Part shown: piece after piece, positions 4,030 to 17,995 of the stretch
Layout: each line of letters opens with the position of its first letter
Numbering within the stretch: position 1 is the first letter of the stretch
Sequence record: KJ019103.1
Direction: 5' to 3' (one strand)
Length of the DNA stretch: 64,000 bases
Notes under the pieces: model-generated
The model's database searches: none
What the model was told of the DNA's origin: nothing
What the model saw: only the letters and a program-made list of their open reading frames with translations
Position numbers and translations under genes: made by a program

Positions 4030-4073
4030 AAGTGGCGCACCTGATTGGCAAACCCAAAAATATGTGTTATACT
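4030..4073 (+). promoter_or_regulatory. Promoter TTGGCA-17bp-TATACT (extended -10 TG) with AAGTGGCGC box
   Basis: -35 at 4045-4050, TGT-TATACT at 4065-4073. Confidence 0.65.
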
Positions 4074-4078
4074 GGGTA

Positions 4079-4164
4079 GGTATTGGTAGCGTTTTCAGGG
4101 GTGAATAAACTACCAATACCAATCTAAACTCATAGAAAACCACTCCTCATGGGGTGGTTTTTTT
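4079..4164 (+). ncRNA. Candidate ~85-nt small RNA (long 5' hairpin plus terminator)
   Basis: Lies between a promoter and an intrinsic terminator with no ORF; 11-bp perfect stem ggtattggtag/ctaccaatacc. Confidence 0.45.
4136..4164 (+). terminator. Rho-independent terminator
   Basis: aaaaccactcc-tcat-ggggtggttttttt. Confidence 0.75.
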
Positions 4165-4186
4165 GTGCGCGTATAACTAGTGTAAC

Positions 4187-4495
4187 TTGGGTTACATTAT
4201 GAAAGCCGACGCACAACTAGAACACCACGCCAATTGTTGGAATGCTATTCGAAATAATGATAAGGAATACTTTAAGATAGGAGTTGGTGTTTATAAAACT
4301 ATCAACGCTGATAGGGAATACTATATCAATAGTCGTATTGAAACTGATAAGAATAGTGATATATCAGAGATGGATCAAGTGAAAGAAGCCCACTCCAAAC
4401 ACTTAAGTTATTTTATTGGATACAAATCAGAAGTAACAGTTGAAGCTATCAGTAGTGATTGGAAATCTACCCTATACCGGGTTACTACCTGCTAG
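4187..4495 (+). CDS. Hypothetical protein (probable start ATG 4199)
   Basis: ORF after a TATAAC -10-like element. Confidence 0.55.
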
Positions 4496-4527
4496 GGTGT
4501 GTTATAATAGATGAAATGCATGTTGTG

Positions 4528-5526
4528 ATGAAAGCTTTAATCTCTGGTATAACTGGGCAGGATGGATCCTATCTTGCTGAACTTCTACTGAAGAAGGGGT
4601 ATGAAGTCCATGGTATTATTCGTAGAACCTCCTCGTTTAATACAGGAAGAATCGATCATATCTTCGATCAGTTACACCTCCACTACGGGGATTTGACTGA
4701 CTCCCTGAACATAGTCTCTATCATTAAGGAAGTAGAACCTGATGAGATCTACAACCTAGGGGCACAGAGTCATGTGAAAGTATCTTTCGAGGAACCTGAA
4801 TATACAGCACAGACTGATGCTCTGGGGACCCTAAGAGTATTGGAGGCAGTTCGTCTCCTAGGTATGACAGATAAGGTTCGTATCTACCAGGCATCCACTA
4901 GTGAGTTGTATGGGTTGGTACAAGAGACACCCCAGAAAGAAACAACACCTTTCTACCCACGATCTCCATATGGTGTAGCTAAACTCTATGGATATTGGAT
5001 TGTAAAGAACTATCGTGAGAGTTATGGGATGCACGCCAGTAGTGGTATTCTATTCAACCATGAGTCACCACGACGGGGTGAGACTTTCGTAACCCGTAAG
5101 ATTACTAGGGGACTATCCCGTATTAGTACAGGACTACAGGATTGTCTATACCTAGGTAATCTAAACTCAAGACGAGATTGGGGTCATGCTGAAGACTATG
5201 TGGAGGCTATGTGGTTGATGTTACAACAGGAAACTCCTGATGACTATGTGATTGCCACAGGTAAAGAGTATTCAGTGAAGGACTTTGTAGAGGCATCTGC
5301 TGAATACTTTGGTATGAAGATTGAGTGGCAGGGTGAAGGATTGGATGAAGTGGGTATAGATAGATTTACAAAGAAGGTTGTCGTTCGTGTGAGTGACAAA
5401 TACTTCAGACCAGCAGAGGTTGAAACTCTCTGGGGTGATCCCACTAAGGCTAAAGAGGTATTGGGTTGGAAACCTAATCATACCTTTGCTTCCCTAGTAG
5501 AAGATATGTGTATCTACGGTCAGTAA
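4528..5526 (+). CDS. gmd: GDP-mannose 4,6-dehydratase
   Basis: [39 protein letters not shown] and [18 protein letters not shown]. Start placed at MKALI after the TGTTATAAT promoter. Confidence 0.97.
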
Positions 5527-5528
5527 TT

Positions 5529-6455
5529 ATGGAAAAAGGTGCAACGGTAGCAGTATTTGGTTCGGGTGGATTGGCTGGAAGTGCCATCACCAGGGCACTC
5601 AGGTGTTCTTTTGGGGGGTATAAGATTCTTACTCCTAGGAGTAAAGAACTAGACCTAAGAGAACAAGCAGATGTTCGTAGTTGGTTTAAGCATAACAAAG
5701 TTGATTATGTATTCTTAGCTGCTGCCTTAGTTGGTGGTATCATGGCTAACAAGACTAGAAAGGCAGAGTTCTTACATGACAATCTAATGATGCAGTGTAA
5801 TGTAATTGACTCTGCATACTATAGTGGAGTGAAGAAACTTCTATTCCTAGGTACTTCTTGTATCTATCCAGCAGGAAGGCACCATCCACTAGTGGAACAT
5901 GAACTACTCACAGGACTATTAGAACCAACCAATGACGCATACGCAATCGCAAAGATCGCAGGGATCAAACAATGTGACTTCTACCGAGAACAATATGGAT
6001 TTGATGCTATCTCTATCATGCCTCCTAATCTATATGGTCCTGGAGATAATTTCAATGAGGGATCAGGACATGTCCTCGCCTCATTGATGAATAGGTTTCA
6101 CCTAGCGAAGGAAGCAGGTGCATCTAGAGTTGAATGTTGGGGTGATGGGACACCTATGAGGGAGTTCCTATATGTGGATGACTTAGCAGATGCTTCCTTA
6201 TACTTTATGGATAGTTATAGTGAGTCTGGGCACATTAATACTGGGACTGGTAGGGATGTAACTATCAAACAACTAGCGGAGACTATTGCTGATGTAGTTG
6301 GATACAAAGGTGAGATAGGTTGGGATACAACTAAACCCAACGGAAACCCAAGGAAACTACTTGACAGCAGTAGGGCAAACCTGTTAGGATGGGAACCCAA
6401 GGTTAAATTTGAAGACGGAATCAAACTCACATACAACTGGTATCTAGCACAATGA
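5529..6455 (+). CDS. fcl: GDP-L-fucose synthase / ColC-like GDP-4-keto-deoxysugar epimerase-reductase
   Basis: GSGGLAGSA, LAAALVGGIMAN, FLGTSCIYP, YAIAKIAG and WGDGTPMREFLYVDDLA. Confidence 0.9.
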   Translation: MEKGATVAVFGSGGLAGSAITRALRCSFGGYKILTPRSKELDLREQADVRSWFKHNKVDYVFLAAALVGGIMANKTRKAEFLHDNLMMQCNVIDSAYYSGVKKLLFLGTSCIYPAGRHHPLVEHELLTGLLEPTNDAYAIAKIAGIKQCDFYREQYGFDAISIMPPNLYGPGDNFNEGSGHVLASLMNRFHLAKEAGASRVECWGDGTPMREFLYVDDLADASLYFMDSYSESGHINTGTGRDVTIKQLAETIADVVGYKGEIGWDTTKPNGNPRKLLDSSRANLLGWEPKVKFEDGIKLTYNWYLAQ

Positions 6456-7645
6456 CAAAGATTACAAATGGATATACGTGGCCTCTTATGAAGGACACTG
6501 TGACCAAGAGAGATAGGTTGAGGATGGCAAAGTTTATCCTCACCAGTGATAGACTAACACAAGGTAAAGAAGTTCGTAAGTTTGAGGAGCAGTGGAGTGA
6601 GTGGCTTGGAGTTAAACATTCTCTTTTTGTTAGCAGTGGCAGTACCGCTAACCTACTTCTTGTGTCTGCTTGGAAGGAATTATACGAGATCCCAGACCAG
6701 TCGAAAGTAATTGTACCTGCTTGTACTTGGGTAACTAATGTTGCTCCTATCATTCAGTGTGGTTTGACTCCAATCTTTTGTGACATCAACTTAGAAGACT
6801 ACTCCTTTGATCTGGATAAACTACAGGATATTCGTGATGAATATCACGATGACATCAGAGGTATCTTTGTTACTCACCTCCTAGGATTTCCTGCTAATGT
6901 GGAAAAGTTTCGTGATGTTTTCCCCGACGCTCATATTCTAGAAGATGTATGTGAGAGTCACGGAGCAGTCCTCCCTAGTGGTGATAAGGCGGGAACCTTT
7001 GATGTTGGTGGCACATTTAGTTTCTACTTTGGGCACCACATGACTACCATTGAAGGTGGTATGGTGAGTACTAATGATCCAGAACTCTATGATCTAATGA
7101 GAATGAAGCGTTCTCATGGGTTAGCGAGAGAATCACTATACTTTGAAACATACAAAGAGAAGTATCCTGATGTAAATCCACAGTTTCTCTTCGTTACTGA
7201 GGGATATAACTTCCGTAATACTGATCTAGCTGCTGTATTAGGACAGTCTCAACTGAAGAGACTAGACAGTATGATTGGGATTCGTAACAGGAACTATGAG
7301 TTATACCAACAATTACTAAAGAAACACGAACATGACCTTACACATGAGTATGGTGGTTCTTTCTATATCCCCTCCACACAGGGGGATGTAAGTAGTTTCT
7401 GTTTTCCATTTGTAGTTGATAATATGCACTGCTATCTTAAGTTAAAAGAACTTCTAGAAGAATACTATGTTGAGTATCGACCTATTGTGAGTGGTAACCT
7501 CCTACGACAACCATTCTTGAGAGAATATTCTGCTGAGTGTCCCAAGGCAGATATAGCCCATGAAAAGGGACTATATATTGGGAATAATCACTTTGTAGAT
7601 GAGTCTAACTTTCACATGCTAGATGAGATTTTGAGCCAACTTTGA
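6452..7645 (+). CDS. colD: PLP-dependent GDP-4-keto-6-deoxymannose 3-dehydratase (ColD/WbdK-like, DegT family)
   Basis: VSSGSTANLL, LEDVCES and GTFSFYFGHHMTTIEGG, with His at the position of the usual Schiff-base Lys. Confidence 0.75.
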   Translation: MTKITNGYTWPLMKDTVTKRDRLRMAKFILTSDRLTQGKEVRKFEEQWSEWLGVKHSLFVSSGSTANLLLVSAWKELYEIPDQSKVIVPACTWVTNVAPIIQCGLTPIFCDINLEDYSFDLDKLQDIRDEYHDDIRGIFVTHLLGFPANVEKFRDVFPDAHILEDVCESHGAVLPSGDKAGTFDVGGTFSFYFGHHMTTIEGGMVSTNDPELYDLMRMKRSHGLARESLYFETYKEKYPDVNPQFLFVTEGYNFRNTDLAAVLGQSQLKRLDSMIGIRNRNYELYQQLLKKHEHDLTHEYGGSFYIPSTQGDVSSFCFPFVVDNMHCYLKLKELLEEYYVEYRPIVSGNLLRQPFLREYSAECPKADIAHEKGLYIGNNHFVDESNFHMLDEILSQL

Positions 7646-7646
7646 T

Positions 7647-8441
7647 ATGACATTTTCATTTAATCATATGGGCAACTTGGGGCATCTGGGAAACCAGATG
7701 TTTCAGTATGCCGCACTCATTGGTATGGGGGCTAAGCATGGGAGGAGTATTTGTATCCCCCATAAACAAAGTTTTGGGCAATCATACTACCAGGATCTTC
7801 GTAGTAATATCTACGATGCTTTCAACCTCTCACCCAATGGTGTAGGTATCAGTAGGTTCCCCACAGTTCAGGAAGGTAGTTTCCACTTTGATGAAAACTT
7901 ATTTGAAAACCCACCAGAGGAGAACTGTAACCTCTATGGATTCTTCCAGAGTGAAAAGTGGTTCTCACATATCAAAGAAGGTATTAGGAAAGAGTTCACT
8001 CTAAAGGATGAGTACCGGGAAGTGGCACAACTGATGAGAGACCAACTCTCCGGTCAGGTTGTTGCTATTCATGTTCGTAGAACTGATTACCTATCCAATC
8101 CAAACCACGGAGCATTGGGGTTAGACTACTATGAGAAGGCGCTAGAGTTAGTTCCTAATAACCTCACAGTAGTTGTATTCACTGATGATCCAGAGTGGGC
8201 TAAAGAACAACCACTCTTCCCAGATGATAGGTTCTTTGTATCAGAGACAGACTGTCCCTATACAGACCTTGCTCTTATGAGTATGTGTGATTATCATATT
8301 ATCGCCAACAGTTCATACTCTTGGTGGGGTGCATACTTATCTGATAGTAAGAAAGTAATTGCTCCTAAACAGTGGTTTGGGGAACCACTTAAAACAAATA
8401 ACCTGAAAGATCTTTATTGTGATGGGTGGGTGAAACTATGA
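7647..8441 (+). CDS. GT11 alpha-1,2-fucosyl/colitosyltransferase
   Basis: GHLGNQMFQYA, YGFFQSEKWF, AIHVRRTDY and IIANSSYSWWGAYL are GT11 motifs. Confidence 0.92.
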   Translation: MTFSFNHMGNLGHLGNQMFQYAALIGMGAKHGRSICIPHKQSFGQSYYQDLRSNIYDAFNLSPNGVGISRFPTVQEGSFHFDENLFENPPEENCNLYGFFQSEKWFSHIKEGIRKEFTLKDEYREVAQLMRDQLSGQVVAIHVRRTDYLSNPNHGALGLDYYEKALELVPNNLTVVVFTDDPEWAKEQPLFPDDRFFVSETDCPYTDLALMSMCDYHIIANSSYSWWGAYLSDSKKVIAPKQWFGEPLKTNNLKDLYCDGWVKL

Positions 8442-9061
8442 GTAACTTTGCAAGTGCTAAACAGTTTATCAAGAATGGTATTGATACACAACAGGAGTCT
8501 ATCTCTGGTGGTGGCAGCACTATGGCTTCCACAGTTGCCTTCAGATACTTCCTACCAAAGTATATCAAACAGTATGGTATTGAGAGTATCTTAGACATTG
8601 GGTGTGGTGACTGGCATTGGATGTCTACTATCAGAGAAGAGTTTCCTGATGTAGACTATGAGGGATGGGATGCCTCTGAGGATATGATTAATCCCATGAC
8701 TGAGAAGTATGGAACAGAGAATACCAGGTTTGAGGTAAAGGATATCATTGATAACAAGTATCCCAAAGTGGATTTGGTTATCGCTCGTGATGTTCTATTC
8801 CACCTCAAAGAAGATTACCTAAAGAAGGTTCTCAAGAATATCAGTAAGGCAGGTGTGAAGTATCTACTAGCAACTACCTTCCCAGGTTTACCTAAGAACG
8901 AAGAACTCACTCCTAAGAAATATGACGGTTGGGGATTCAGACCAATCAATCTGGATATCGAGCCTTATAATATGAAAGATTATTGTATCAATGATTTCAA
9001 GGAAACCACAGCCCCCAACAGGGGGTATCATCGTCATGTGTATTTGTATGAGGTAAAATGA
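8438..9061 (+). CDS. Class I SAM-dependent methyltransferase
   Basis: SGGGST..., ILDIGCGDWHW and DLVIARDVLFHL. Confidence 0.85.
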   Translation: MSNFASAKQFIKNGIDTQQESISGGGSTMASTVAFRYFLPKYIKQYGIESILDIGCGDWHWMSTIREEFPDVDYEGWDASEDMINPMTEKYGTENTRFEVKDIIDNKYPKVDLVIARDVLFHLKEDYLKKVLKNISKAGVKYLLATTFPGLPKNEELTPKKYDGWGFRPINLDIEPYNMKDYCINDFKETTAPNRGYHRHVYLYEVK

Positions 9062-9210
9062 AGATCGAAATTGAACTCTCTAAAGATGTAGAATACAAAG
9101 GAGAGAAACTAGGTGAGTATATCTGGAACCTAGAAGAGGGAATTAATCATGTTACTGGTTTTGGTGATTCACTTGAGGAATGTTTTAAGGAAATTGTGAG
9201 GTTTAGATGA
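9058..9210 (+). CDS. Small hypothetical protein (50 aa); not in the ORF track
   Basis: ATGA overlaps at both ends; MKIEIELSKDVEYKGEKLGEYIWNLEEGINHVTGFGDSLEECFKEIVRFR. Confidence 0.65.
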   Translation: MKIEIELSKDVEYKGEKLGEYIWNLEEGINHVTGFGDSLEECFKEIVRFR

Positions 9211-9938
9211 AGAAAGTAGCTATTATCTTTATTGGAACAGGTAGATACCTAGAGTTTCTACCAAAGTATTATGAACAGGCAGAAGCAAACCTCTTCCCTG
9301 ACAGACCCAAACACTACTATGTGTTTACTGATGGTGACTTAGGTAATGAACTACCTGACAATGTAACTGTATACGAACAGGAACATCTCCAATGGCCATA
9401 CATCACCCTCTATCGTTTCGGTATTATCCAGAAACACCTAGAGGAGATTGAGAAGGAGTGTGGTTTCCTACTCTTTATGGATGCTGATACACAGGTAGTA
9501 TCCCCTGTATCGTTCGATGAAGTATTCAGGAAGGGAAAACCCTATACAGGTGTTCATCACCCCTGCCACGCCCTGAATATGCCACCACACAATGAGTTTC
9601 CTGGTAGTCTAGAAACTAATACAGCATCCAAGGCAGCATGTAAACCTGGTGATGACTTCTCTGTATATTGGCAAGGTTGTGTATGGGGTGGAAACATAAA
9701 GGGTGCTCGTAAGATTATTGATACTCTCCACCACAGAACTAAACAAGATGAGGAGAATGGAATCATTGCCAAGTGGCATGATGAAAGTCATATCAATAGA
9801 TACTTCCTTGACAACAAAGATAAGGTGAATACCCTATCACCTAGTTTCGCATACCCAGAGTCCTTCACTGAGTATATGGAAGACTACGAACCTAAGATTG
9901 TACACCTAGCAAAAGAGAATTCTAAGTATCAGGTATGA
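9207..9938 (+). CDS. GT6 family glycosyltransferase (ABO/alpha-1,3-Gal(NAc) transferase-like)
   Basis: KVAIIFIGTGRY, YYVFTD, FMDAD (DxD), GVHHP, YWQGCVWGG and KWHDESHINRY. Confidence 0.9.
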   Translation: MKKVAIIFIGTGRYLEFLPKYYEQAEANLFPDRPKHYYVFTDGDLGNELPDNVTVYEQEHLQWPYITLYRFGIIQKHLEEIEKECGFLLFMDADTQVVSPVSFDEVFRKGKPYTGVHHPCHALNMPPHNEFPGSLETNTASKAACKPGDDFSVYWQGCVWGGNIKGARKIIDTLHHRTKQDEENGIIAKWHDESHINRYFLDNKDKVNTLSPSFAYPESFTEYMEDYEPKIVHLAKENSKYQV

Positions 9939-10558
9939 GTTACTTCACAGATTATGACAACGAATTCACAGTATTCGAGGCACCAAAGAACGGGGGAACT
10001 ACTCTCCGTCTTTGGATATACTACGCAGGAACAGGGGAGTTGGTGAAGTCAGCGGAGTCTGAATACTACGCTGGCACTGGAGAAACATACAAACAACTCC
10101 AAGAGTGGGGTTATGTGAATGGGGAATACGAGAACCCCAAGACCCAGATGGTATGTATCAAGAGAGACCCTGTAGATAGGTTTGTAAGTGCCTTCTATGA
10201 TAAGGTAATCAAAGAGGGGAGAATCAAAGTAACCATCGATGAGTTTCTCTCAAACTATGAAGAGATACTTGATAAGTCTACCCTCAAGATGAATGATGGT
10301 AAGACTAACTTCATGAAGTTTCACTTTGAGTCACAGACATATCACTTTGGTAAAGATAGAGATCTATATCATAAGGTCTTTGATATCTCAGAGGTTGGTA
10401 CTGGTCTGAAGAAGTATCTGGAGAGTAAGTGGAATATAGAACTACCTGATGTCCATGCTAGAAATAGTGGTGGTGGTAGAAAGTTTGATCTCTCCAGGGG
10501 ACAACTGAATAAGGTGAAGGAAATCTACACACAGGACTATTATAATGGCTGGTACTGA
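9935..10558 (+). CDS. Sulfotransferase family 2-like protein
   Basis: PAPS-binding-like motifs APKNGGTT and KRDPVDRFVSAF. Confidence 0.75.
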   Translation: MSYFTDYDNEFTVFEAPKNGGTTLRLWIYYAGTGELVKSAESEYYAGTGETYKQLQEWGYVNGEYENPKTQMVCIKRDPVDRFVSAFYDKVIKEGRIKVTIDEFLSNYEEILDKSTLKMNDGKTNFMKFHFESQTYHFGKDRDLYHKVFDISEVGTGLKKYLESKWNIELPDVHARNSGGGRKFDLSRGQLNKVKEIYTQDYYNGWY

Positions 10559-11330
10559 AGGATATATCCTGATAGGTATTGGTGATAGGTATCTACAGAT
10601 GACAGAGAACCTCACTAAAACTCTAAAGAAACATGGAGATAATAGAGGATCCCTAACTATCACAAGATCGGATAATAGGGAACTCTATAGTGAGTGCAAC
10701 ACTGAGTTTGAGAGGAATGGAACTCTACCTAAGATTACCTTAGATAGATACCTACCTTTTGATCACAATATATTCCTAGATGCTGATATGTTATGTGTAG
10801 GTGATACACAACATGTATGGGATCTATTCAGGAGTAGTGATCAGTTTGTTCAACAGGTAGGATGTTTGGGAAGAGATCCTAACTTCCACGCTCACCAGTA
10901 TGAGAGTGAGTTGGGTTTTGAGATTCCTAGAGTCCATGGTGGTTGTATCTACATCAATAGAGAGAAACTAGACCCAGAGTTCTTTCCCTATATGAGAGAG
11001 TGTTTCCTAAACTATAAACAAATATTTCATAATAGTGGTCTAACCTATAAGAATAGTAGACCAGACCAACCACTATACGCTCTAGCAAATGGTATGTGGG
11101 GATTCAAACCTGTGGATCTATACACTAACCCTATCATGACTATTGTGAATGATAGTACCCCACCCCCACTAGATAGTGTGTTCTTCAATAAGAAGAGGGG
11201 TCCTAAGTTAGATACTCCTGTTCCCTTTGTTCATGTATTCCGTGGAGAAGAGGGTATGTCTAAGGGTTATACTAGAGGTGACCAGAAGATGTTGTTGTCC
11301 CATTATGATTACTACCTGAACTATGAATAA
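10545..11330 (+). CDS. GT-A fold glycosyltransferase (GT8-like)
   Basis: LPKITL...NIFLDADML (DxD) and DQP motif. Confidence 0.6.
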   Translation: MAGTEGYILIGIGDRYLQMTENLTKTLKKHGDNRGSLTITRSDNRELYSECNTEFERNGTLPKITLDRYLPFDHNIFLDADMLCVGDTQHVWDLFRSSDQFVQQVGCLGRDPNFHAHQYESELGFEIPRVHGGCIYINREKLDPEFFPYMRECFLNYKQIFHNSGLTYKNSRPDQPLYALANGMWGFKPVDLYTNPIMTIVNDSTPPPLDSVFFNKKRGPKLDTPVPFVHVFRGEEGMSKGYTRGDQKMLLSHYDYYLNYE

Positions 11331-12111
11331 AACTATATGGATGTGTTGGTTCCAGGGTTGGGATAAGGCACCAGAGATTACAGAGAAGTGTTTAGAGTCC
11401 TGGAAACACTACAATAGTGATTGGGATATTGTTCTACTAGATGAATCCAACTACAAGGATTACATCTCCATTGATAAAGAACTACCAGGACTGAAGACAA
11501 ACTATATCTCACTGGGTGATATCCTTCGTCTCTTTCTACTAAAAGAGCATGGTGGAGTATGGGCAGATGCAACTATCTTCTGCAACAAACCAGTGGATTG
11601 GGTTTTGGATTATGAGGATTCTTTCATCTTCACCAGGAAGGATAAGATGATTGCCTCTTGGTTTGTTGCTGCTCAGAAAGATTCTCATGTTGTAGATGTA
11701 TGGTATAATAAGATGTTAGAGTTCTGGAAGTATCGTATGGAAAATACAGATACTTTCGAGCAACAATATGGTTGGATACACGCTTTGTTCCGTCAGTCCT
11801 ACGCTCAGGATAAGGGGTTCAGGGATATTGTAGATAGTATGGATAAGATTGATTGCATGAGTGATGGTCAATCTAGAGGTAAGGGTCCGCACTTCTTTGC
11901 ACCCTACAGTAAATACTTCTACAACCCTATCAGTGACACGATAAAGAATCGTATAGACTCTAAAGTTGATCCACTATATAAGTTGTCTTACAAGGCAAAC
12001 ACAGACTGGAGAAGTCCAGAGAACAGGGGTATCCACCCAGCAGACCAAAAGATTATGTTGGAATATCCAACTAATAGTGAACTACATTATCTACTCAACA
12101 CATTAAAATGA
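11323..12111 (+). CDS. Capsular polysaccharide synthesis protein (Caps_synth/GT32-like glycosyltransferase)
   Basis: IWMCWFQG..APE...C, DILRLFLLKEHGGVWADAT. Confidence 0.85.
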   Translation: MNKTIWMCWFQGWDKAPEITEKCLESWKHYNSDWDIVLLDESNYKDYISIDKELPGLKTNYISLGDILRLFLLKEHGGVWADATIFCNKPVDWVLDYEDSFIFTRKDKMIASWFVAAQKDSHVVDVWYNKMLEFWKYRMENTDTFEQQYGWIHALFRQSYAQDKGFRDIVDSMDKIDCMSDGQSRGKGPHFFAPYSKYFYNPISDTIKNRIDSKVDPLYKLSYKANTDWRSPENRGIHPADQKIMLEYPTNSELHYLLNTLK

Positions 12112-13013
12112 CAAATAAATCATTGGTTACCGGTGGCGCGGGTTTCATCGGGTCACATATTGTGGACCGACTTATTACACTAGGACATCAAGTCGTAGTG
12201 ATTGACAATGAATCCTCTGATGGTCATGATGAATACCATTGGAACAGAAGCGGACAAGTACAAAACCATAAGGCAGACATTCGTGACTACGATGCAATCA
12301 AACACTTGTTTGGTGGAGTCAATAATGTTTTTCACCTTGCCGCTAAAGCATCAGTACAGGCGTCAGTAGATAACCCCCTACCAACTATTGCCACACAGGT
12401 AATGGGAACCGCCAATGTATTGGAGGCAGCACGACAATCTGGTGTGAGTAAGTTTGTATATTCCTCTACTAGTGCTTGTTATGGTAACAACAACCCCATT
12501 CCTAATGTAGAAACGATGAGAGAAGATCCTCTCAACGCCTATGCTATTGGTAAGTTATCTGGGGAACAACTAGTTCGTGCCTATCACTACCTCTATGGTA
12601 TGAAGACGGTGGCATTCCGTTATACCAATGTATATGGGGAGAGGGCAAGACATGTAGGACACTATGCTCCTGCTGTTAGTAAGTTCCTAAAGATGAGAGC
12701 ACAGGGAGAACCCCTAACTATCTTTGGTGATGGTGCCCAACGCCGGGACTTTATTCATGTATCTGATGTAGTCAACGCTAACTGCTGTATTACCTATGAG
12801 GAACTAGAGCAGTGGGGTGAGACCTATAACATTGGTTATGGTAAGAACTGGAGTATCCAAGAGATCGCAGACTCTATCAGTCAGGAACAGATTCACCTAT
12901 CTGCTCGTACTGGTGAGATGCGTGAGACGCTTGCTGATATTGGGAAGGCAAAGGCAGAGTTGATGTGGAAACCAAAGACTGACATCATGGATTGGATTAG
13001 GGTACAACTCTGA
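12108..13013 (+). CDS. NAD-dependent nucleotide-sugar epimerase/dehydratase (UDP-Glc/GlcNAc 4-epimerase-like)
   Basis: VTGGAGFIGSH, YxxxK (YAIGK) and IFGDGAQRRDFIHVSDVV. Confidence 0.9.
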   Translation: MTNKSLVTGGAGFIGSHIVDRLITLGHQVVVIDNESSDGHDEYHWNRSGQVQNHKADIRDYDAIKHLFGGVNNVFHLAAKASVQASVDNPLPTIATQVMGTANVLEAARQSGVSKFVYSSTSACYGNNNPIPNVETMREDPLNAYAIGKLSGEQLVRAYHYLYGMKTVAFRYTNVYGERARHVGHYAPAVSKFLKMRAQGEPLTIFGDGAQRRDFIHVSDVVNANCCITYEELEQWGETYNIGYGKNWSIQEIADSISQEQIHLSARTGEMRETLADIGKAKAELMWKPKTDIMDWIRVQL

Positions 13014-13630
13014 TGCCAGTATTTCAGAAGGACAACAAGAAAGTTCTATTCATCCATGTTCCCAAGACTGCAGGAAGTTCTGTGAATAAACTCTTTGTGA
13101 ATAATGGATATGAAATGTCCTACTATTCTGAGAGTTCTAAAGATCTATACAATGGATTATGTGGACCACAACATCTGGACTCACTTCTATTGGAAGATGA
13201 GTTCCAAGATTTCTCTCAGTTTGATTATATCTTCTCTATCTTCAGAGACCCAGTAGACAGACATCTATCTGAGTTCACCTGGGCACCCTGGGGACTAATG
13301 GGTAGAAACATCTACACACCAGAAAGATTTGATGAGTGGTGTCCTAAGATATTCAGAGCGTATCAGGACTCACCATATAGGATGGATAATCACATTAGAC
13401 CTCAACATGAGTTCTATGTCAATGGATGTGATGTGTATGACTATGAAAATATCAATACACTCACAGAGAAACTATGTGATAAAATAGGTCTAGATAATAA
13501 AGAGATGCCATATGAAAGGTCTTCACGATATGATAGTGAGGATTATGTCATCTATGAAGATACTTACAATTGTATTACTGAATTTTACAAAGGAGACTAT
13601 CAATGGCAAAAGGATTCAGTCCTGTTGTGA
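13013..13630 (+). CDS. Sulfotransferase family 2 protein
   Basis: LFIHVPKTAGSSV and FSIFRDPVDR. Confidence 0.8.
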   Translation: MPVFQKDNKKVLFIHVPKTAGSSVNKLFVNNGYEMSYYSESSKDLYNGLCGPQHLDSLLLEDEFQDFSQFDYIFSIFRDPVDRHLSEFTWAPWGLMGRNIYTPERFDEWCPKIFRAYQDSPYRMDNHIRPQHEFYVNGCDVYDYENINTLTEKLCDKIGLDNKEMPYERSSRYDSEDYVIYEDTYNCITEFYKGDYQWQKDSVLL

Positions 13631-14481
13631 CTAAGGATAAGAACAAGTCCCAGTTCAAACTACAGGGTGTTCCTAGGATTTACTACATCAGTTTAGATGA
13701 TCATGCTCATCGTCAAGACTATATGGAGTCCCAGTTTGAAGACTGGGGCATCACTAACTTCGAAAGAATCTCTGCTCATGATGGTAGAGGTGATAATGAT
13801 CTGAGTGATATTCTCAAAGGATCTTATCCAAAGATGATGACTTCTGGTGAGGTTGGTTGTGTGACCTCTCACCTAAAGGCACTCAAACACTGGTTAGATA
13901 CTACAGAGGATGAAGAGTTTCTCCTTATGATGGAGGATGATTGTGATATCTCCACTGCTGCCCACTGGGGTTTCTCCTGGAGGGAGTTTGTTGGGAATGT
14001 TCCATCCCATGTAGATTGTGTTCAGTTGGCAGTTATCAATCCAGCAGAACTACACATCAAAATCCATATCAGGTTTGTGAATGATTTCTCCACTGCCTCA
14101 TACCTAATCCGTAGATCACACGCGGAGAAGTTAGTTAGACTCTATTGTAGGGGTGATAAGTATAAACTTGATAGTGATATCAAACCCAGAGCAGTTGCTG
14201 ACGATCTTATCTACAACTCTGGTGTGACTCTTGCTATGCCACTGTTTGCATACAAGATCGCACTAGGTTCCAGTATCCATGATGTCCATATCAATACCTT
14301 CCACAAGAGTAGTCATGATGGTATCTGGGAGTTTTGGAAGAAAACAGCACCAACTATTGATAACTGGAAACCATTCTTCAACTATGATGCCTATCTGGGA
14401 ACCCTACCACCCAATGTTGTGGTTCAACAATGGCAGCAAAAACAGGAATCCAAGGCAAAAGATTCAGGGGCTTCGCAATAG
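13603..14481 (+). CDS. GT25 glycosyltransferase
   Basis: IYYISLD...RQDYM, FERISAHDG, GEVGCVTSHLKA and MMEDD. Confidence 0.85.
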   Translation: MAKGFSPVVTKDKNKSQFKLQGVPRIYYISLDDHAHRQDYMESQFEDWGITNFERISAHDGRGDNDLSDILKGSYPKMMTSGEVGCVTSHLKALKHWLDTTEDEEFLLMMEDDCDISTAAHWGFSWREFVGNVPSHVDCVQLAVINPAELHIKIHIRFVNDFSTASYLIRRSHAEKLVRLYCRGDKYKLDSDIKPRAVADDLIYNSGVTLAMPLFAYKIALGSSIHDVHINTFHKSSHDGIWEFWKKTAPTIDNWKPFFNYDAYLGTLPPNVVVQQWQQKQESKAKDSGASQ

Positions 14482-14525
14482 AACATATATATGTTATAAT
14501 ATTTACATTCACCCATGAGGTTATT

Positions 14526-15303: not shown

Positions 15304-15334
15304 AGAAGGAGGGTTTGATACCCTCCTTTTTTTG
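15304..15334 (+). terminator. Rho-independent terminator
   Basis: agaaggaggg-tttgata-ccctccttttttt. Confidence 0.8.
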
Positions 15335-15340
15335 TGCTCC

Positions 15341-15348
15341 TATAAATA
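15341..15348 (+). promoter_or_regulatory. T4-type late promoter TATAAATA
   Basis: Exact gp55 consensus upstream of the tail fibre gene. Also at 24353, 25118, 26337, 28475, 46455 and 58658. Confidence 0.75.
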
Positions 15349-15380: not shown

Positions 15381-17795
15381 ATGGCATTTAAGATTAATGG
15401 CGTAGTACGCATTGATAATAGTGGCAACGGTTTTCTGGGAATTGTAACCGCTACCGACGCTAATATCACAGGAGTTCTCACTGCCACTGAGGTGGATGCG
15501 AAAGTATCATCTAAGGCAATAACTGAACAAACAGATGGAACCGTAGATGATGTAACTGGTGCAGATGAACTATTACTATTAGATGCTGAGACTGGTGGAT
15601 TACTAAGAGTATCAATAGATGAGTTCGTGCAGGGTTCAGGCATTGGAACTCTAGTAACGGACTTTGATAACTTAACTGTTACTGGTATCACAACCGTTGC
15701 CACCCTCAAAGGTATTGGATCTAATAACATCAGTGTAGGGAGCACACTTTCCTTTGCTGATGGTACAGAGATCATCATGGGTGACTCTGGTGACTTCAGT
15801 ATTCATCATGATGGTGACCATACTTACCTAGATGAGACGGGGCAGGGTAATCTAAAACTCCGTACAAATAACTTTAGAGTAACAAATATAGCAGAAACAA
15901 AACCAGCTATTACAGCACAGGTTACTTCTGGTGTTGAGTTGTATTTTGATGGTAATAAGAAGATAGAAACTACAAATACTGGTGTTCTTGTGAGTGGTAT
16001 GCTCACTGCTGATAGATTAAGATCAGGTGATATTGCTGCTAGAAATGTAATCACACTGGGTATTACCACTATCCAAGATCATTTGGAAGTGAATGATAGT
16101 ACTGGTTCTGGTACCGAATACAATCTCAATGTTAAGACCAATGGTAGTTCTACCTTTGGTGTCTTAGGTAATGGAAATATTCTACTTGGAAACAGTTCCG
16201 GTGCTCCATTCATGGCGACGAATGATCACCACGCAACTTCCAAGAAGTATGTGGATGATGCTATTGATGATTCCGTCAGCTACATCGGTGCTAGTGCTTG
16301 GGGTTCTTTTAATTCTGACGGGACGACTGAAGGTGCTTTCAACTGTAGTGCAACTAGAGGATCAGCAGGGGAATACGTGGTTACCTTTACCACTGCATTG
16401 TCTGATTCGGATTATGCAGTGAACGCCACTAGTAATGGCTCTAGTAATTATGACGTTTTTATTGATAATAAAGCAACGACAGGTTTTACAGTAAGCACTA
16501 GAAATGCGTTAAGTGCAAACGCCGGTGATCAGGCTTTTTGTGTATCCATCCACGGTGCTAATGCAATTGCACCGCCGTCAGGCGTAGGCGCTGACGCCTG
16601 GGGAACATTCTCTGGAACGACTGGCGACCTGCAAGCTGGGATGAATATCAGCTCAACTACACGTACTGCCCTAGGAGAATATGACGTAGAATTTATAACC
16701 GAGATGCCTTCGGACTCAGAATATGCCGTAACCGCAGTATCTAATGCAAGTCAAGCAAAGTTTATTAATATACGCAATAAGTCTACAAGTGGTTTTAAGG
16801 TTGTAACTAGAGATGGTTCTGGAAATATTTCTGACGGAGCCGTATCCTTTGCCGTCCACGCATCATCAACAGTCACGCCAACCTATACCTGGACACGCGA
16901 CGGCACAACGCTTAAGCCTGCTAATGATGGTGATGATGTAGAGGTGAACGGTCGGGGCCTTTTCGAAAGCAGCCAGCCGGCTGACTATGTTGTGAGAGTA
17001 AAAAACACCGACACAGGTACTATCAATCCCGCATGTTTGCTGCTGGACATGCGAGATGTTGACGCTTCTAATAATTATTCAGCCTTAAGGGTAGTAGGTT
17101 ACAACACTACAACAGGTCTTGATATAAATTCAGACGGCGCTATCACGGCTCAGGGGCAGATAACCGCAAACGTCAGTAACCAAGGCGGAGAGAATAGTGC
17201 AATCAAGGCAATTCAAACCAACTCCAACGGGTATGCGGTATGGGTTGGTGATGGACCTAACTCTACAGATAGAACCGCTTCTATAGGCCCTGATGGAAGA
17301 GCCACGTTTTCCTCCGGCAAAATTTCGCTGGGTCCGACCGGCTCGGGGACGTTTGCAGACAATAACATCTTCCTGCAGTCGGACGGACAAGTCAGATGCA
17401 CGAACGTAATTACATCTTCAGCTTTGGCAGGCTCAGGCACCAGACCATTATATGTCGACTCATCTGGTGGTTTAACTATCAGCTCTTCTGATCGTAGTTT
17501 GAAGACGAACATCACTACTCTTCCTGATCAGATACAAGTAGTCAAAGCATTAAATCCCGTTTCGTTTAATTGGATAGAGAAAGAAAGACTAGGTGCAGGT
17601 CTTGAAATTGGATTTATTGCTCAAGAAGTAGAAGAAATCGTTCCTGAGGTTGTTCGTAGCACTGCCGGAATACTTTCAGTAGATTATGCAAAATTAACCG
17701 CAACTTTAACGTCTGCCCTACAGGCAGCACTCACCCGCATCGAAGCCCTCGAAGCGAAAGTCCAATCACTCGAAGAAGGTGTGACACCTGACTAA
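15381..17795 (+). CDS. Tail fibre protein with C-terminal intramolecular chaperone (peptidase S74)
   Basis: Gly/Thr-rich fibre repeats, two tandem AWGxF...GEYxVxF domains, and SDRSLKTNI...IGFIAQEV...VDYAKL plus a coiled coil. Confidence 0.85.
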   Translation: MAFKINGVVRIDNSGNGFLGIVTATDANITGVLTATEVDAKVSSKAITEQTDGTVDDVTGADELLLLDAETGGLLRVSIDEFVQGSGIGTLVTDFDNLTVTGITTVATLKGIGSNNISVGSTLSFADGTEIIMGDSGDFSIHHDGDHTYLDETGQGNLKLRTNNFRVTNIAETKPAITAQVTSGVELYFDGNKKIETTNTGVLVSGMLTADRLRSGDIAARNVITLGITTIQDHLEVNDSTGSGTEYNLNVKTNGSSTFGVLGNGNILLGNSSGAPFMATNDHHATSKKYVDDAIDDSVSYIGASAWGSFNSDGTTEGAFNCSATRGSAGEYVVTFTTALSDSDYAVNATSNGSSNYDVFIDNKATTGFTVSTRNALSANAGDQAFCVSIHGANAIAPPSGVGADAWGTFSGTTGDLQAGMNISSTTRTALGEYDVEFITEMPSDSEYAVTAVSNASQAKFINIRNKSTSGFKVVTRDGSGNISDGAVSFAVHASSTVTPTYTWTRDGTTLKPANDGDDVEVNGRGLFESSQPADYVVRVKNTDTGTINPACLLLDMRDVDASNNYSALRVVGYNTTTGLDINSDGAITAQGQITANVSNQGGENSAIKAIQTNSNGYAVWVGDGPNSTDRTASIGPDGRATFSSGKISLGPTGSGTFADNNIFLQSDGQVRCTNVITSSALAGSGTRPLYVDSSGGLTISSSDRSLKTNITTLPDQIQVVKALNPVSFNWIEKERLGAGLEIGFIAQEVEEIVPEVVRSTAGILSVDYAKLTATLTSALQAALTRIEALEAKVQSLEEGVTPD

Positions 17796-17837: not shown

Positions 17838-17883
17838 AAACACATAAATAAGAAATGTAACGTTCTTATTACAACACTTCCAT

Positions 17884-17955
17884 CTAACCGAGACCTACGG
17901 GGAAGTAAAATACGTCTCTAATACCTACACCGGAGGGTGGTGTAGGAATAATACT
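17884..17955 (+). ncRNA. PhotoRC-II-like cis-regulatory RNA in the psbA leader
   Basis: Pairings gagac/gtctc and cctacacc-ggag-ggtggtgtagg in the psbA 5' UTR resemble, from memory, the cyanophage PhotoRC-II motif. Confidence 0.6.
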
Positions 17956-17995
17956 ATCGTCAGCTCCCCCTGGCACTACTTACCCTTTTTACACA

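What the first reader, a model, noticed from the sequence alone, without database searches (positions are those of the whole stretch)
7647..9938. GT11 plus GT6 pair: machinery for a blood-group A/B-like epitope, with an unusual donor pocket
Established: GT11 makes Fuc-alpha1,2-Gal (H antigen) and GT6 adds alpha-1,3-Gal/GalNAc to it; GT6 genes are already known in some cyanophages. Seen: both are in one operon with the deoxysugar pathway. The GT6 keeps a DxD motif (FMDAD, metal-dependent type), but its donor-specificity loop reads YWQGCVWGG, versus YYLGGFFGG/YYMGAFFGG in human A/B enzymes. Inference: it makes a colitosylated A/B-like trisaccharide, possibly with a non-canonical donor, either to mask the host surface (superinfection or grazer evasion) or to decorate the virion.
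Basis: partly seen in the sequence, partly recalled or inferred. Interest (0 to 1): 0.68.

Follow-up and report, generated by a model that had tools for sequence, protein, structure and literature searches.

The report
Cyanophage blood-group-like glycan gene cassette
A marine cyanophage carries the same pair of sugar-adding enzymes that make human blood-group antigens, probably to build a B-like sugar cap with the rare sugar colitose, but the pair was already known in cyanophages and its "odd" donor pocket is a known galactose-specific variant.

Summary
Window 7647-8441 encodes a GT11 enzyme and 9207-9938 a DXD-type GT6 enzyme. Both lie in a 13-gene, overlapping-ORF cassette (4528-14481) of Synechococcus phage ACG-2014f, whose GenBank record already names both families.

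- **Colitose route.** Upstream lie Gmd, an Fcl-type epimerase/reductase and a ColD-type 3-dehydratase with the diagnostic histidine. GDP-colitose, and GDP-fucose, are therefore plausible donors.
- **Conserved pair.** GT11 sits within 100 bp upstream of GT6 in 18 viral loci and within 1.5 kb in 39 of 80 bacterial loci. P-SSM2's published "LPS cluster" is syntenic.
- **Donor pocket.** The loop is not exceptional. Y-x-Q-G-C-x-W-G-G is the commonest form in the DXD prokaryote/phage lineage. QGC grafted into human A transferase gave pure B (galactose) activity (Yamamoto 2014).

Most likely the GT25 enzyme lays down a beta-Gal, GT11 adds alpha-1,2 colitose or fucose, and GT6 adds alpha-1,3 galactose. 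Two sulfotransferases, a methyltransferase and two further transferases then decorate the product.

The phage lacks priming, flippase and polymerase genes, so it must use a host primer or a protein acceptor. The target, infected-cell surface or virion, is unresolved. No enzyme of this DXD/QGC lineage has been assayed. Another note of this scan already flagged the colitose pathway on this same window. Verdict: a new member of a known kind, of moderate interest.

The parts
4528..5526 (+). GDP-mannose 4,6-dehydratase (Gmd)
   Evidence: TIGR01472 at 555 bits against a 415 cut-off. Pfam GDP_Man_Dehyd at 2.9e-152. Annotated as such in KJ019103.1.
5529..6455 (+). Fcl/GMER-type GDP-4-keto-6-deoxymannose epimerase/reductase, the likely GDP-fucose and GDP-colitose synthase (ColC role)
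   Evidence: E. coli GDP-fucose synthetase 1bsv at 3.9e-92. The GMER residues S107, C109, Y136, K140 and H179 are all aligned and kept. The NCBIfam Fcl model scores 420 bits, below its 500 cut-off.
6452..7645 (+). ColD-type PLP/PMP GDP-4-keto-6-deoxymannose 3-dehydratase. The catalytic His is H195 (motif G-H-H, nt 7031-7039).
   Evidence: The best PDB hits are E. coli O55 ColD (2gms at 8.4e-51, also 3gr9). Perosamine synthases score only about 1e-25. His aligns with ColD H188, where aminotransferases have Lys. The motif is conserved in all phage homologues.
7647..8441 (+). GT11 alpha-1,2-L-fucosyl/colitosyl-transferase, with HVRRTD at nt 8070-8087 and SSYSWWGAYL at nt 8310-8339
   Evidence: Pfam PF01531 at 6.6e-28. 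phrog_2644 at 4.8e-142. The motifs are present in 118 and 119 of 120 homologues. Annotated 'glycosyltransferase family 11' in GenBank.
8438..9061 (+). SAM-dependent methyltransferase, a candidate sugar O-methyltransferase
   Evidence: Pfam Methyltransf_12, _25 and _31 at 1e-8 to 1e-10. phrog_3382. Found only in the closest relatives L001-L004.
9058..9210 (+). 50-aa ORF of unknown function (phrog_3687)
   Evidence: It is missing from relatives: L004 lacks it, and a metatranscriptome contig joins 9057 to 9207.
9207..9938 (+). DXD-type minimal GT6 retaining alpha-1,3-hexosyltransferase. DAD at nt 9480-9488, donor loop YWQGCVWGG at nt 9666-9692, WHDES (catalytic Glu) at nt 9774-9788, H233..K236 at nt 9903-9914.
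   Evidence: Pfam PF03414 at 3.5e-21. BoGT6a at 2e-27 and human ABO transferases at about 1e-16. Model pLDDT 95.7 with TM 0.85-0.89. Invariant residues are listed.
9935..10558 (+). Sulfotransferase 1 (PAPS motifs PKNGGTT and RDPVDRFVS)
   Evidence: Pfam Sulfotransfer_2 at 1.2e-6. Motifs read directly.
10545..11330 (+). Probable fifth glycosyltransferase (GT-A fold, DXD, weakly GT8-like)
   Evidence: hhalign gives 94% probability to the N-terminal half of the GT6 profile, including the LDADM motif. Weak Glyco_transf_8 hits occur in 6 of 19 members. No structure could be obtained.
11323..12111 (+). Caps_synth / GT32-type glycosyltransferase
   Evidence: Pfam PF05704 at 6e-41 and Gly_transf_sug at 1.6e-8.
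12108..13013 (+). GalE/WbpP-like UDP-hexose 4-epimerase, a possible UDP-Gal (or UDP-GalNAc) supply
   Evidence: The best PDB hits are UDP-glucose 4-epimerases (4zrm at 5.7e-50, 7ys8), then WbpP and WbgU. 50% identical to the P-SSM2 epimerase at the same position.
13013..13630 (+). Sulfotransferase 2 (PKTAGSS and RDPVDRHLS)
   Evidence: Pfam Sulfotransfer_2 at 5.8e-8. phrog_3347 'Galactose-3-O-sulfotransferase'. Motifs.
13603..14481 (+). GT25 glycosyltransferase, a candidate beta-galactosyltransferase that would make the Gal acceptor
   Evidence: Pfam PF01755 at 3.1e-12. 59% identical to the P-SSM2 copy and 68% to the S-CAM7 copy. The beta-Gal role is inferred from the family, not tested.

Best explanation
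The stretch belongs to a 10-kb, 13-gene glycan cassette of the lytic T4-like cyanophage ACG-2014f. The cassette works in the cytoplasm of the infected Synechococcus cell.

- Sugar supply. Gmd, ColD and the Fcl-type enzyme turn GDP-mannose into GDP-L-colitose, and into GDP-L-fucose when ColD is bypassed. A GalE-like epimerase can supply UDP-Gal.
- Assembly. The GT25 enzyme probably provides a beta-galactoside. GT11 caps it with alpha-1,2 colitose or fucose, giving an H-like disaccharide. The Mn/Mg-dependent GT6 then adds an alpha-1,3 hexose to the same galactose.
- Donor. The Q-G-C donor motif points to galactose, so the product would be a blood-group-B-like branched trisaccharide.
- Decoration. 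A GT32 enzyme, a GT8-like enzyme, two sulfotransferases and a methyltransferase decorate the product further.
- Target. The phage has no priming transferase, flippase or polymerase. The glycan must therefore be built on a host-provided primer, most likely a lipid-linked envelope glycan that the host exports. That would re-surface the infected cell with an epitope cyanobacteria rarely make.

Shown here: gene identities, catalytic motifs, fold and conserved gene pairing. Inferred: linkages, donors, order of action and target.
For: Family assignments and motifs. Fold.

Functional coupling of GT11 and GT6:
- GT11 ends 3-100 bp before GT6 in 18 viral loci at only 30-66% identity.
- GT11 is within 1.5 kb in 39 of 80 bacterial GT6 loci.
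- The same gene backbone is found in P-SSM2.

Acceptor side: H118, Y154, W190 and E193 align with the H-antigen-binding residues His122, Tyr153, Trp189 and Glu192 of BoGT6a. They are invariant or nearly so (PMC3516806).

Donor:
- QGC gave B-only activity in human GTA (PMC5377540 Table 2).
- The code also fits the assayed DXD-clade enzyme PaGT6, a GalNAc transferase, because Parachlamydiales relatives carry CGG.
- A UDP-hexose 4-epimerase is encoded in the cassette.

Colitose:
- The catalytic His of ColD is conserved.
- GT11 enzymes WbgN and FUT2 use both GDP-Col and GDP-Fuc.
- Gmd-Fcl-ColD-GT11 stays contiguous in S-CAM7.

Host dependence: no Bac_transf, Glycos_transf_4, Wzx or Wzy_C family match in the whole 217,937-bp genome, with positive controls. 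No protein in the cassette has a hydrophobic segment.

Host-directed rather than late timing:
- There is no late-promoter motif between 2578 and 15341.
- An extended -10 element lies before gmd.
- A terminator and a TATAAATA motif lie just before the tail-fibre gene.
- The cassette sits among hli, ferredoxin, cpeT and psbA genes.

GT6 was found in only 2 of 401 sampled cyanobacterial genomes. Pieces of the cassette occur in contigs of four marine RNA libraries.
Against: - No enzyme of the DXD/QGC lineage has been assayed.
- The QGC result comes from a human scaffold. The phage pocket also differs at W160 (human F270) and H233 (human A343, a position said to govern room for the fucose). Both co-vary strictly with QGC. 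Donor or acceptor could therefore differ.
- The cassette's epimerase is about as close to UDP-GlcNAc 4-epimerases as to GalE.
- The Fcl-type enzyme keeps everything needed to make plain GDP-fucose, so the share of colitose is unknown.
- The beta-Gal role of GT25 rests on family precedent only.
- The promoter evidence is consensus matching.
- RNA-library contigs may contain DNA.
- Nothing here shows where the glycan ends up.
Confidence: 0.5

Rival explanations
1. The glycan is put on phage proteins (tail fibres, capsid decoration, or the phage-encoded pilin), not on the host envelope. Soluble cytoplasmic transferases would glycosylate virion proteins before assembly, as in some mycobacteriophages and giant viruses.
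For: All cassette proteins are soluble. The phage has no lipid-carrier priming or export genes. The cassette lies upstream of a tail-fibre gene in ACG-2014f, S-CAM7 and P-SSM2. A giant-virus MAG contig also carries a GT6 with GT11 46 bp away.
Against: No protein-O/N-glycosyl priming transferase was recognised. There is no late-promoter motif inside the cassette, whereas the tail-fibre gene has its own terminator-promoter boundary. The cassette is embedded among host-like auxiliary genes. GT25, GT11 and GT6 relatives in bacteria sit in LPS or O-antigen loci.
Confidence: 0.18
2. The GT6 uses a non-canonical donor (UDP-Glc, UDP-GalNAc or another UDP-sugar), so the product is A-like or something new rather than B-like.
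For: The DXD/QGC lineage is a separate, biochemically untested branch (quick tree). Its pocket differs from human enzymes at four positions: Q156, C158, W160 and H233. The adjacent epimerase could make UDP-GalNAc. The closest assayed DXD enzyme, PaGT6, transfers GalNAc.
Against: QGC gave strong B and no A activity in human GTA. A Cys at the 268 position is bulkier than the Gly or Ala that admits an N-acetyl group. The A-type motifs (AGG, AAA, CGG) occur in a different viral clade that includes P-SSM2.
Confidence: 0.25
3. GT11 and GT6 act on different acceptors, so there is no branched A/B-like trisaccharide. They would be neighbours only because both belong to a shuffled pool of surface-glycan genes.
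For: H233 replaces the small residue (Ala or Ile) that makes room for fucose in GTA and BoGT6a. In this phage two ORFs separate the genes. S-CAM7 keeps GT11 but lacks GT6.
Against: Tight adjacency is retained across very divergent viral and bacterial loci. His118, which is Gln in the fucose-independent alpha-3GT, is conserved.
Confidence: 0.12

Closest known systems
Prochlorococcus phage P-SSM2 'LPS cluster' (PSSM2_257-271; Sullivan et al. 2005, PMC1079782; its GT6 is discussed in PMC3516806)
   Same: Same genomic island and same backbone order: Gmd, Fcl-like, GT11, two ORFs, GT6, one ORF, epimerase, GT25, then hli, ferredoxin and psbA. Identities are 74, 54, 42, 30, 50 and 59%. Both GT6 proteins are minimal DXD enzymes.
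   Different: P-SSM2 has no ColD. Its GT6 loop is YYAGGFNGG (AGG, predicted GalNAc or 'A') and belongs to another clade. It has GT1 and GT2 genes instead of the sulfotransferases and GT32.
E. coli O86 B-antigen genes (GT11 fucosyltransferase plus GT6 WbnI; Yi et al. 2005, as cited in PMC5377540)
   Same: GT11 followed by GT6, building Gal-alpha-1,3(Fuc-alpha-1,2)Gal on a beta-Gal made by another transferase. The predicted donor is galactose.
   Different: The bacterial enzymes are of the NXN (metal-independent) type and sit in a full O-antigen locus with priming, flippase and polymerase genes. The phage has none of these. The phage may use colitose instead of fucose.
BoGT6a of Bacteroides ovatus (PDB 4ayj, 4cj8)
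   Same: Best sequence match (2e-27) and best structural match (TM 0.85-0.89). It is a minimal catalytic domain. The acceptor residues His122, Tyr153, Trp189 and Glu192 are shared.
   Different: BoGT6a has NXN in place of DXD, an AGG donor motif (GalNAc), Ile at the A7 position and a C-terminal membrane-binding region. The phage enzyme has DAD, QGC and His233, and no such tail.
PaGT6 of Parachlamydia acanthamoebae (PMC3516806)
   Same: The only assayed member of the minimal DXD prokaryote/phage group. It is metal-dependent and requires an H-type (2'-fucosylated) acceptor.
   Different: It transfers GalNAc. Parachlamydiales relatives carry CGG or AGA motifs and fall in the A-type DXD clade, not the QGC clade.
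E. coli O55 colitose system (ColD, ColC, GT11 colitosyltransferase WbgN)
   Same: A ColD-type dehydratase with the catalytic His, an Fcl-like reductase, and a GT11 enzyme that puts colitose alpha-1,2 on Gal.
   Different: About 35-40% identity only, inferred from the bit score. In O55 no GT6 follows. The phage enzyme's preference between GDP-Col and GDP-Fuc is unknown.
Human GTA/GTB (ABO transferases)
   Same: Same fold, DXD motif, catalytic Glu in W-H-D-E-S, acceptor His233 and Trp300 equivalents, and the C-terminal Lys346 equivalent.
   Different: About 23-24% identity and no stem or transmembrane region. Donor positions 266/268 are Q/C, against L/G in A and M/A in B. Position 270 is W where the human enzymes have F, and position 343 is H where they have A.

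Membership tests
CAZy GT6 (Pfam PF03414) | Significant match to the family model | tested here: met
   75.7 bits against a gathering score of 25, E 3.5e-21. The NCBIfam subfamily model NF041524 scores 174 bits, below its 250 cut-off.
CAZy GT6 (Pfam PF03414) | GT-A fold superposable on solved GT6 enzymes | tested here: met
   Model pLDDT 95.7. TM 0.85-0.89 to BoGT6a and about 0.8-0.87 to GTA, GTB and alpha-3GT.
CAZy GT6 (Pfam PF03414) | Catalytic Glu (E303 in GTA, E192 in BoGT6a) in the W-H-D-E-S motif | tested here: met
   W190-H-D-E193-S aligns with that motif. D192 and E193 are invariant in 25 sequences.
Metal-dependent (DXD) GT6 subgroup | Asp-X-Asp at the metal site rather than Asn-X-Asn | tested here: met
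   D92-A-D94, both Asp invariant. Metal dependence itself was not assayed.
H-antigen-dependent A/B-type GT6 | Residues that bind the 2'-fucosylated Gal acceptor (His233, Trp300, Glu303; small residue at 343) | tested here: inconclusive
   H118, W190, E193 and Y154 are conserved. The 343-equivalent is an invariant His in the QGC clade rather than Ala or Ile. The Thr245 equivalent is ambiguous in the alignment.
B-type (galactose) donor specificity | Motif at codons 266-268 that gives B and not A activity | tested here: inconclusive
   The motif is QGC, which gave B +++++ and no A activity in the human scaffold (PMC5377540 Table 2). It has not been tested in a native DXD/QGC enzyme.
CAZy GT11 (Pfam PF01531) | Family model match plus the HxRRxD and C-terminal S-x-x-S-W-W motifs | tested here: met
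   98.2 bits against 23.9. HVRRTD and SSYSWWGAYL are present and conserved in 118 and 119 of 120 homologues.
CAZy GT11 (Pfam PF01531) | Alpha-1,2 transfer of an L-6-deoxyhexose from a GDP-sugar to beta-Gal | not testable with these tools
   Family precedent only. WbgN and FUT2 take both GDP-Fuc and GDP-Col.
ColD-type 3-dehydratase | DegT-fold enzyme with His in place of the PLP-binding Lys, closest to ColD | tested here: met
   2gms ColD at 8.4e-51. H195 aligns with ColD H188, the residue changed in the 3b8x variant. Bacterial aminotransferase paralogues in the loci carry Lys there.
Autonomous O-antigen or capsule gene cluster | Priming phosphoglycosyltransferase, Wzx flippase, Wzy polymerase or ligase | tested here: not met
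   No PF02397, PF00953, PF01943 or PF04932 match in the whole genome KJ019103.1. Controls were positive.

The most novel reading that the evidence does not exclude
Marine phages carry an ABO-like system of their own. The conserved GT11-GT6 pair comes in a predicted galactose ('B', QGC/W/H) lineage and predicted GalNAc ('A'; AGG, AAA, CGG) lineages. In at least two lineages a ColD insertion swaps fucose for colitose. ACG-2014f would then paint infected Synechococcus (or its own virions) with a sulfated, methylated, colitose-bearing B-like epitope not described from any organism. That epitope would serve as a phage-versus-phage or anti-grazer identity mark.
Probability: 0.25. Interest if true: 0.65.

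Novelty: new member of a known kind. Interest (0 to 1): 0.4.

Why it matters
Phage-encoded surface-glycan cassettes are among the largest auxiliary gene blocks in marine cyanophages, and none has a known product. This one is unusually readable. The sugar-nucleotide supply, a conserved two-enzyme core with well-studied human and bacterial relatives, and the decorating enzymes are all identifiable, so the predicted epitope can be tested with standard reagents.

If confirmed, it would be the first defined glycan made by a cyanophage. It would also give the first activity for the DXD/QGC branch of GT6, the branch proposed to resemble the ancestor of vertebrate ABO enzymes. As it stands, the gene pair is known and annotated, and the supposed donor-pocket oddity is explained.

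Tried and rejected
- The PDB sequence search with GT11 gave only spurious hits to designed TPR proteins on a 16-residue stretch. There is no informative relative.
- The NCBIfam name 'family 6 glucosyltransferase' looked like a lead to a glucose donor. The hit is below cut-off, and no paper with that phrase exists in the library. I treat it as a naming habit, not evidence.
- The Brew et al. 2010 review (PMC2988317) is not held. Yamamoto 2014 has no held supplements, so the motif of E. coli O86 WbnI could not be read.
- No paper linking colitose with cyanophages was found. 'Colitose' plus 'bacteriophage' gave only receptor and O-antigen papers.
- There is no APS kinase in the phage genome, so PAPS must come from the host.
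The protein atlas was unreachable. A profile search of the PDB gave nothing.
- DNA glycosylation as the role of these enzymes was considered and set aside. GDP-fucose-type GT11, GT6 and the sulfotransferases have no precedent on DNA.
- The careful tree did not finish in time, so only the quick tree with a midpoint root is reported.
Full report
**What the window is.** Bases 4400-14500 are 100% identical to Synechococcus phage ACG-2014f isolate Syn7803US44 (KJ019103.1; Kyanoviridae, Atlauavirus). They are 95-99.4% identical to 44 other genomes of that population. The GenBank record already labels the two genes in question 'glycosyltransferase family 11' and 'glycosyltransferase family 6'.

**The observation.**
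- ORF 7647-8441 matches Pfam Glyco_transf_11 (E 6.6e-28) and ORF 9207-9938 matches Glyco_transf_6 (E 3.5e-21).
- GT11 has the family's HxRRxD and S-x-x-S-W-W motifs.
- With a 25-sequence alignment the GT6 folds at pLDDT 95.7. It superposes on BoGT6a (TM 0.85-0.89) and on human GTA/GTB.
- The two genes are separated by a SAM methyltransferase (8438-9061) and a 50-aa ORF (9058-9210).

**The surroundings.** Thirteen ORFs from 4528 to 14481 run on the + strand, mostly with 4-bp stop/start overlaps. In order they are:

| ORF | Evidence |
|---|---|
| Gmd | Equivalog model, above cut-off |
| Fcl/GMER-type enzyme | 3.9e-92 to E. coli GDP-fucose synthetase; all five catalytic residues kept |
| DegT-fold protein | Best solved relatives are ColD of E. 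coli O55 (8.4e-51); His where aminotransferases have the PLP lysine |
| GT11 | |
| Methyltransferase | |
| 50-aa ORF | |
| GT6 | |
| Sulfotransferase 1 | Both PAPS motifs present |
| 261-aa GT-A/DXD protein | Weakly GT8-like |
| Caps_synth/GT32 transferase | |
| GalE/WbpP-like UDP-hexose 4-epimerase | |
| Sulfotransferase 2 | Both PAPS motifs present |
| GT25 transferase | |

- None of these proteins has a hydrophobic segment.
- The whole phage genome lacks priming transferases, Wzx and Wzy or ligase, and it lacks APS kinase.
- No late-promoter motif (ATAAATA) occurs between 2578 and 15341. An extended -10 element precedes gmd.
- A strong terminator (15304-15330) followed by TATAAATA (15341) separates the cassette and its hli/ferredoxin tail from the tail-fibre gene.

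**Is the pairing meaningful?** Yes.
- In IMG/VR contigs found with the GT6, a GT11 gene ends 3-100 bp upstream of GT6 in 18 loci whose GT6 is only 30-66% identical to this one. Thirty of 38 loci have GT11 within 8 kb.
- In 80 bacterial or archaeal genome loci, 51 have GT11 within 6 kb and 39 within 1.5 kb.
- P-SSM2's 'LPS cluster', published in 2005, has the same backbone in the same genomic position.
- The pair is therefore a deeply conserved module. This phage has a methyltransferase and a small ORF inserted into it.
- S-CAM7 keeps Gmd-Fcl-ColD-GT11-...-GT25 but lacks both GT6 and the epimerase. It adds an APS kinase, which supports the view that sulfation is real in these cassettes.

**The donor pocket.**
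- By alignment to human GTB and BoGT6a, Q156, G157 and C158 correspond to codons 266-268.
- The loop is not peculiar to this phage. All 120 nearest homologues have Y-x-Q-[GA]-C-[LV]-W-G-G. Among 133 representatives at 50% identity, QGC with DXD is by far the commonest form.
- Yamamoto et al. (Sci Rep 2014, PMC5377540) list QGC among bacterial 'B gene' motifs. In their code table, QGC in human A transferase gave no A activity and B activity +++++.
- The same code fits the one assayed minimal DXD enzyme. PaGT6 is a Mg/Mn-dependent GalNAc transferase that needs an H-type acceptor. Parachlamydiales relatives carry CGG, an 'A' motif.
- P-SSM2's enzyme has AGG.
- In viral loci the motif classes are QGC 21, AAA 8, AGG 5 and CGG 1.
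- In a quick tree the DXD/QGC sequences, including this one, lie apart from a supported group (SH-aLRT 95) that holds the DXD A-type and all NXN bacterial enzymes. The tree is midpoint-rooted and only a quick search.
- QGC co-varies strictly with W160 (human F270) and H233 (human A343): 25 of 25 resolved cases. The His replaces the small residue said to make room for the acceptor's fucose. This is a real, unexplained difference on the acceptor side.
- Overall, the pocket differs from the human one and the lineage is unassayed. The best available evidence still predicts an ordinary UDP-Gal donor, not an exotic one.

**The acceptor and the deoxysugar.**
- H118, Y154, W190 and E193 match the residues that BoGT6a and GTA/GTB share for binding 2'-fucosyl acceptors. 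The fucose-independent alpha-3GT has Gln at the His position.
- The ColD-type histidine is conserved in every phage homologue. These include S-CAM7 and a second, A-type (AAA) viral lineage, L027 and L028.
- A Rhizobiales genome locus (L061) combines Gmd, Fcl, a His-type ColD, GT11 and GT6 as well.
- WbgN and human FUT2, both GT11 enzymes, transfer either colitose or fucose depending on supply (PMC11987014).
- GT11 is the only GDP-L-sugar-type transferase in the cassette. It is therefore the only candidate for colitose.
- Because the Fcl-type enzyme can also make GDP-fucose directly, a mixture is possible.

**Where the product goes.** This cannot be decided here.
- The missing priming and export genes and the soluble enzymes fit either extension of a host lipid-linked glycan or glycosylation of a protein.
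- The promoter pattern and the company of host-like auxiliary genes favour a host-directed role.
- GT6 was found in only 2 of 401 sampled cyanobacterial genomes, so the epitope would be foreign to most hosts.
- Contigs from four marine RNA libraries (three studies) cover pieces of ColD through the 261-aa gene at 90-100% identity. This is compatible with expression in the sea. It is not proof, since such libraries can hold DNA.

**Comparison and verdict.**
- The finding is a member of the known class of cyanophage surface-glycan ('LPS') cassettes with a GT11-GT6 core. It is homologous to P-SSM2's cluster and analogous to the E. coli O86 B-antigen genes.
- The particular features here are the ColD insertion (colitose), the inserted methyltransferase, the two sulfotransferases, and membership of the unassayed DXD/QGC/W/H branch of GT6.
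- I found no open paper on phage-encoded colitose synthesis. S-CAM7's record does already annotate its ColD homologue as a 3-dehydrase.
- Another first-stage note of this scan (s1-159050) flagged the colitose pathway on this same window. My checks agree with it.

Noticed in passing
window 4045-4170 (+): A sigma-70-like promoter (TTGGCA-17-TATACT with TG) is followed by a 97-nt stretch that folds into two strong hairpins (MFE -41.9 kcal/mol, z -7.15), the second with a U-run. There is no Rfam match. It is a candidate small RNA just upstream of the glycan cassette.
   Followed up: partly
window 10545-11330 (+): A 261-aa protein of unknown function (phrog_1903) looks like a further GT-A/DXD glycosyltransferase. 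It matches the GT6 N-terminal half at 94% hhalign probability, has weak GT8 hits and an invariant D79-x-D81. About 20 marine homologues were found.
   Followed up: partly
L007-L038 and L120 (viral loci): Viral GT6 genes fall into donor-motif classes: QGC (21), AAA (8), AGG (5) and CGG (1). QGC always comes with Trp at 160 and His at 233, while the A-type enzymes have Ala at 233. This looks like an A/B-style split among marine phages.
   Followed up: partly
L119 (Synechococcus phage S-CAM7, KU686212.1) 7118-14481: S-CAM7 keeps Gmd, Fcl, ColD (65%), GT11 and GT25 but lacks both GT6 and the 4-epimerase. It carries an adenylylsulfate (APS) kinase, which ACG-2014f lacks.
   Followed up: partly
L061 (Rhizobiales bacterium AFS045263): This bacterial locus combines Gmd (65%), an Fcl-like gene, a His-type ColD homologue, GT11 and an NXN GT6 with an MGA (B-type) motif. 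It is a cellular counterpart of the colitose + GT11 + GT6 combination.
   Followed up: no
L121 (G332:C1) 7314-8000 and 9535-10206: One of only two GT6 hits in 401 sampled cyanobacterial genomes lies in a 2.3-Mb genome. It is a DXD enzyme with a Q-N-C motif, near a sulfotransferase-like ORF and without GT11 nearby.
   Followed up: partly
L029 (IMG/VR giant-virus MAG contig) 7702-8418: A GT6 (30% identity, AGG motif) with a GT11 gene 46 bp away lies on a contig labelled as a giant-virus MAG.
   Followed up: no
window 9057-9207: A metatranscriptome contig (run X17) joins 9057 directly to 9207, so a wild relative lacks the 50-aa ORF between the methyltransferase and GT6. L004 also lacks it.
   Followed up: no
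window 15304-15348 and 17864-17959: A strong terminator hairpin (15304-15330) is followed at once by the late-promoter motif TATAAATA (15341), ahead of the tail-fibre gene (15381-17795, with a C-terminal Peptidase_S74 chaperone domain). A PhotoRC-II RNA (RF01717, 69 bits) lies upstream of psbA.
   Followed up: no
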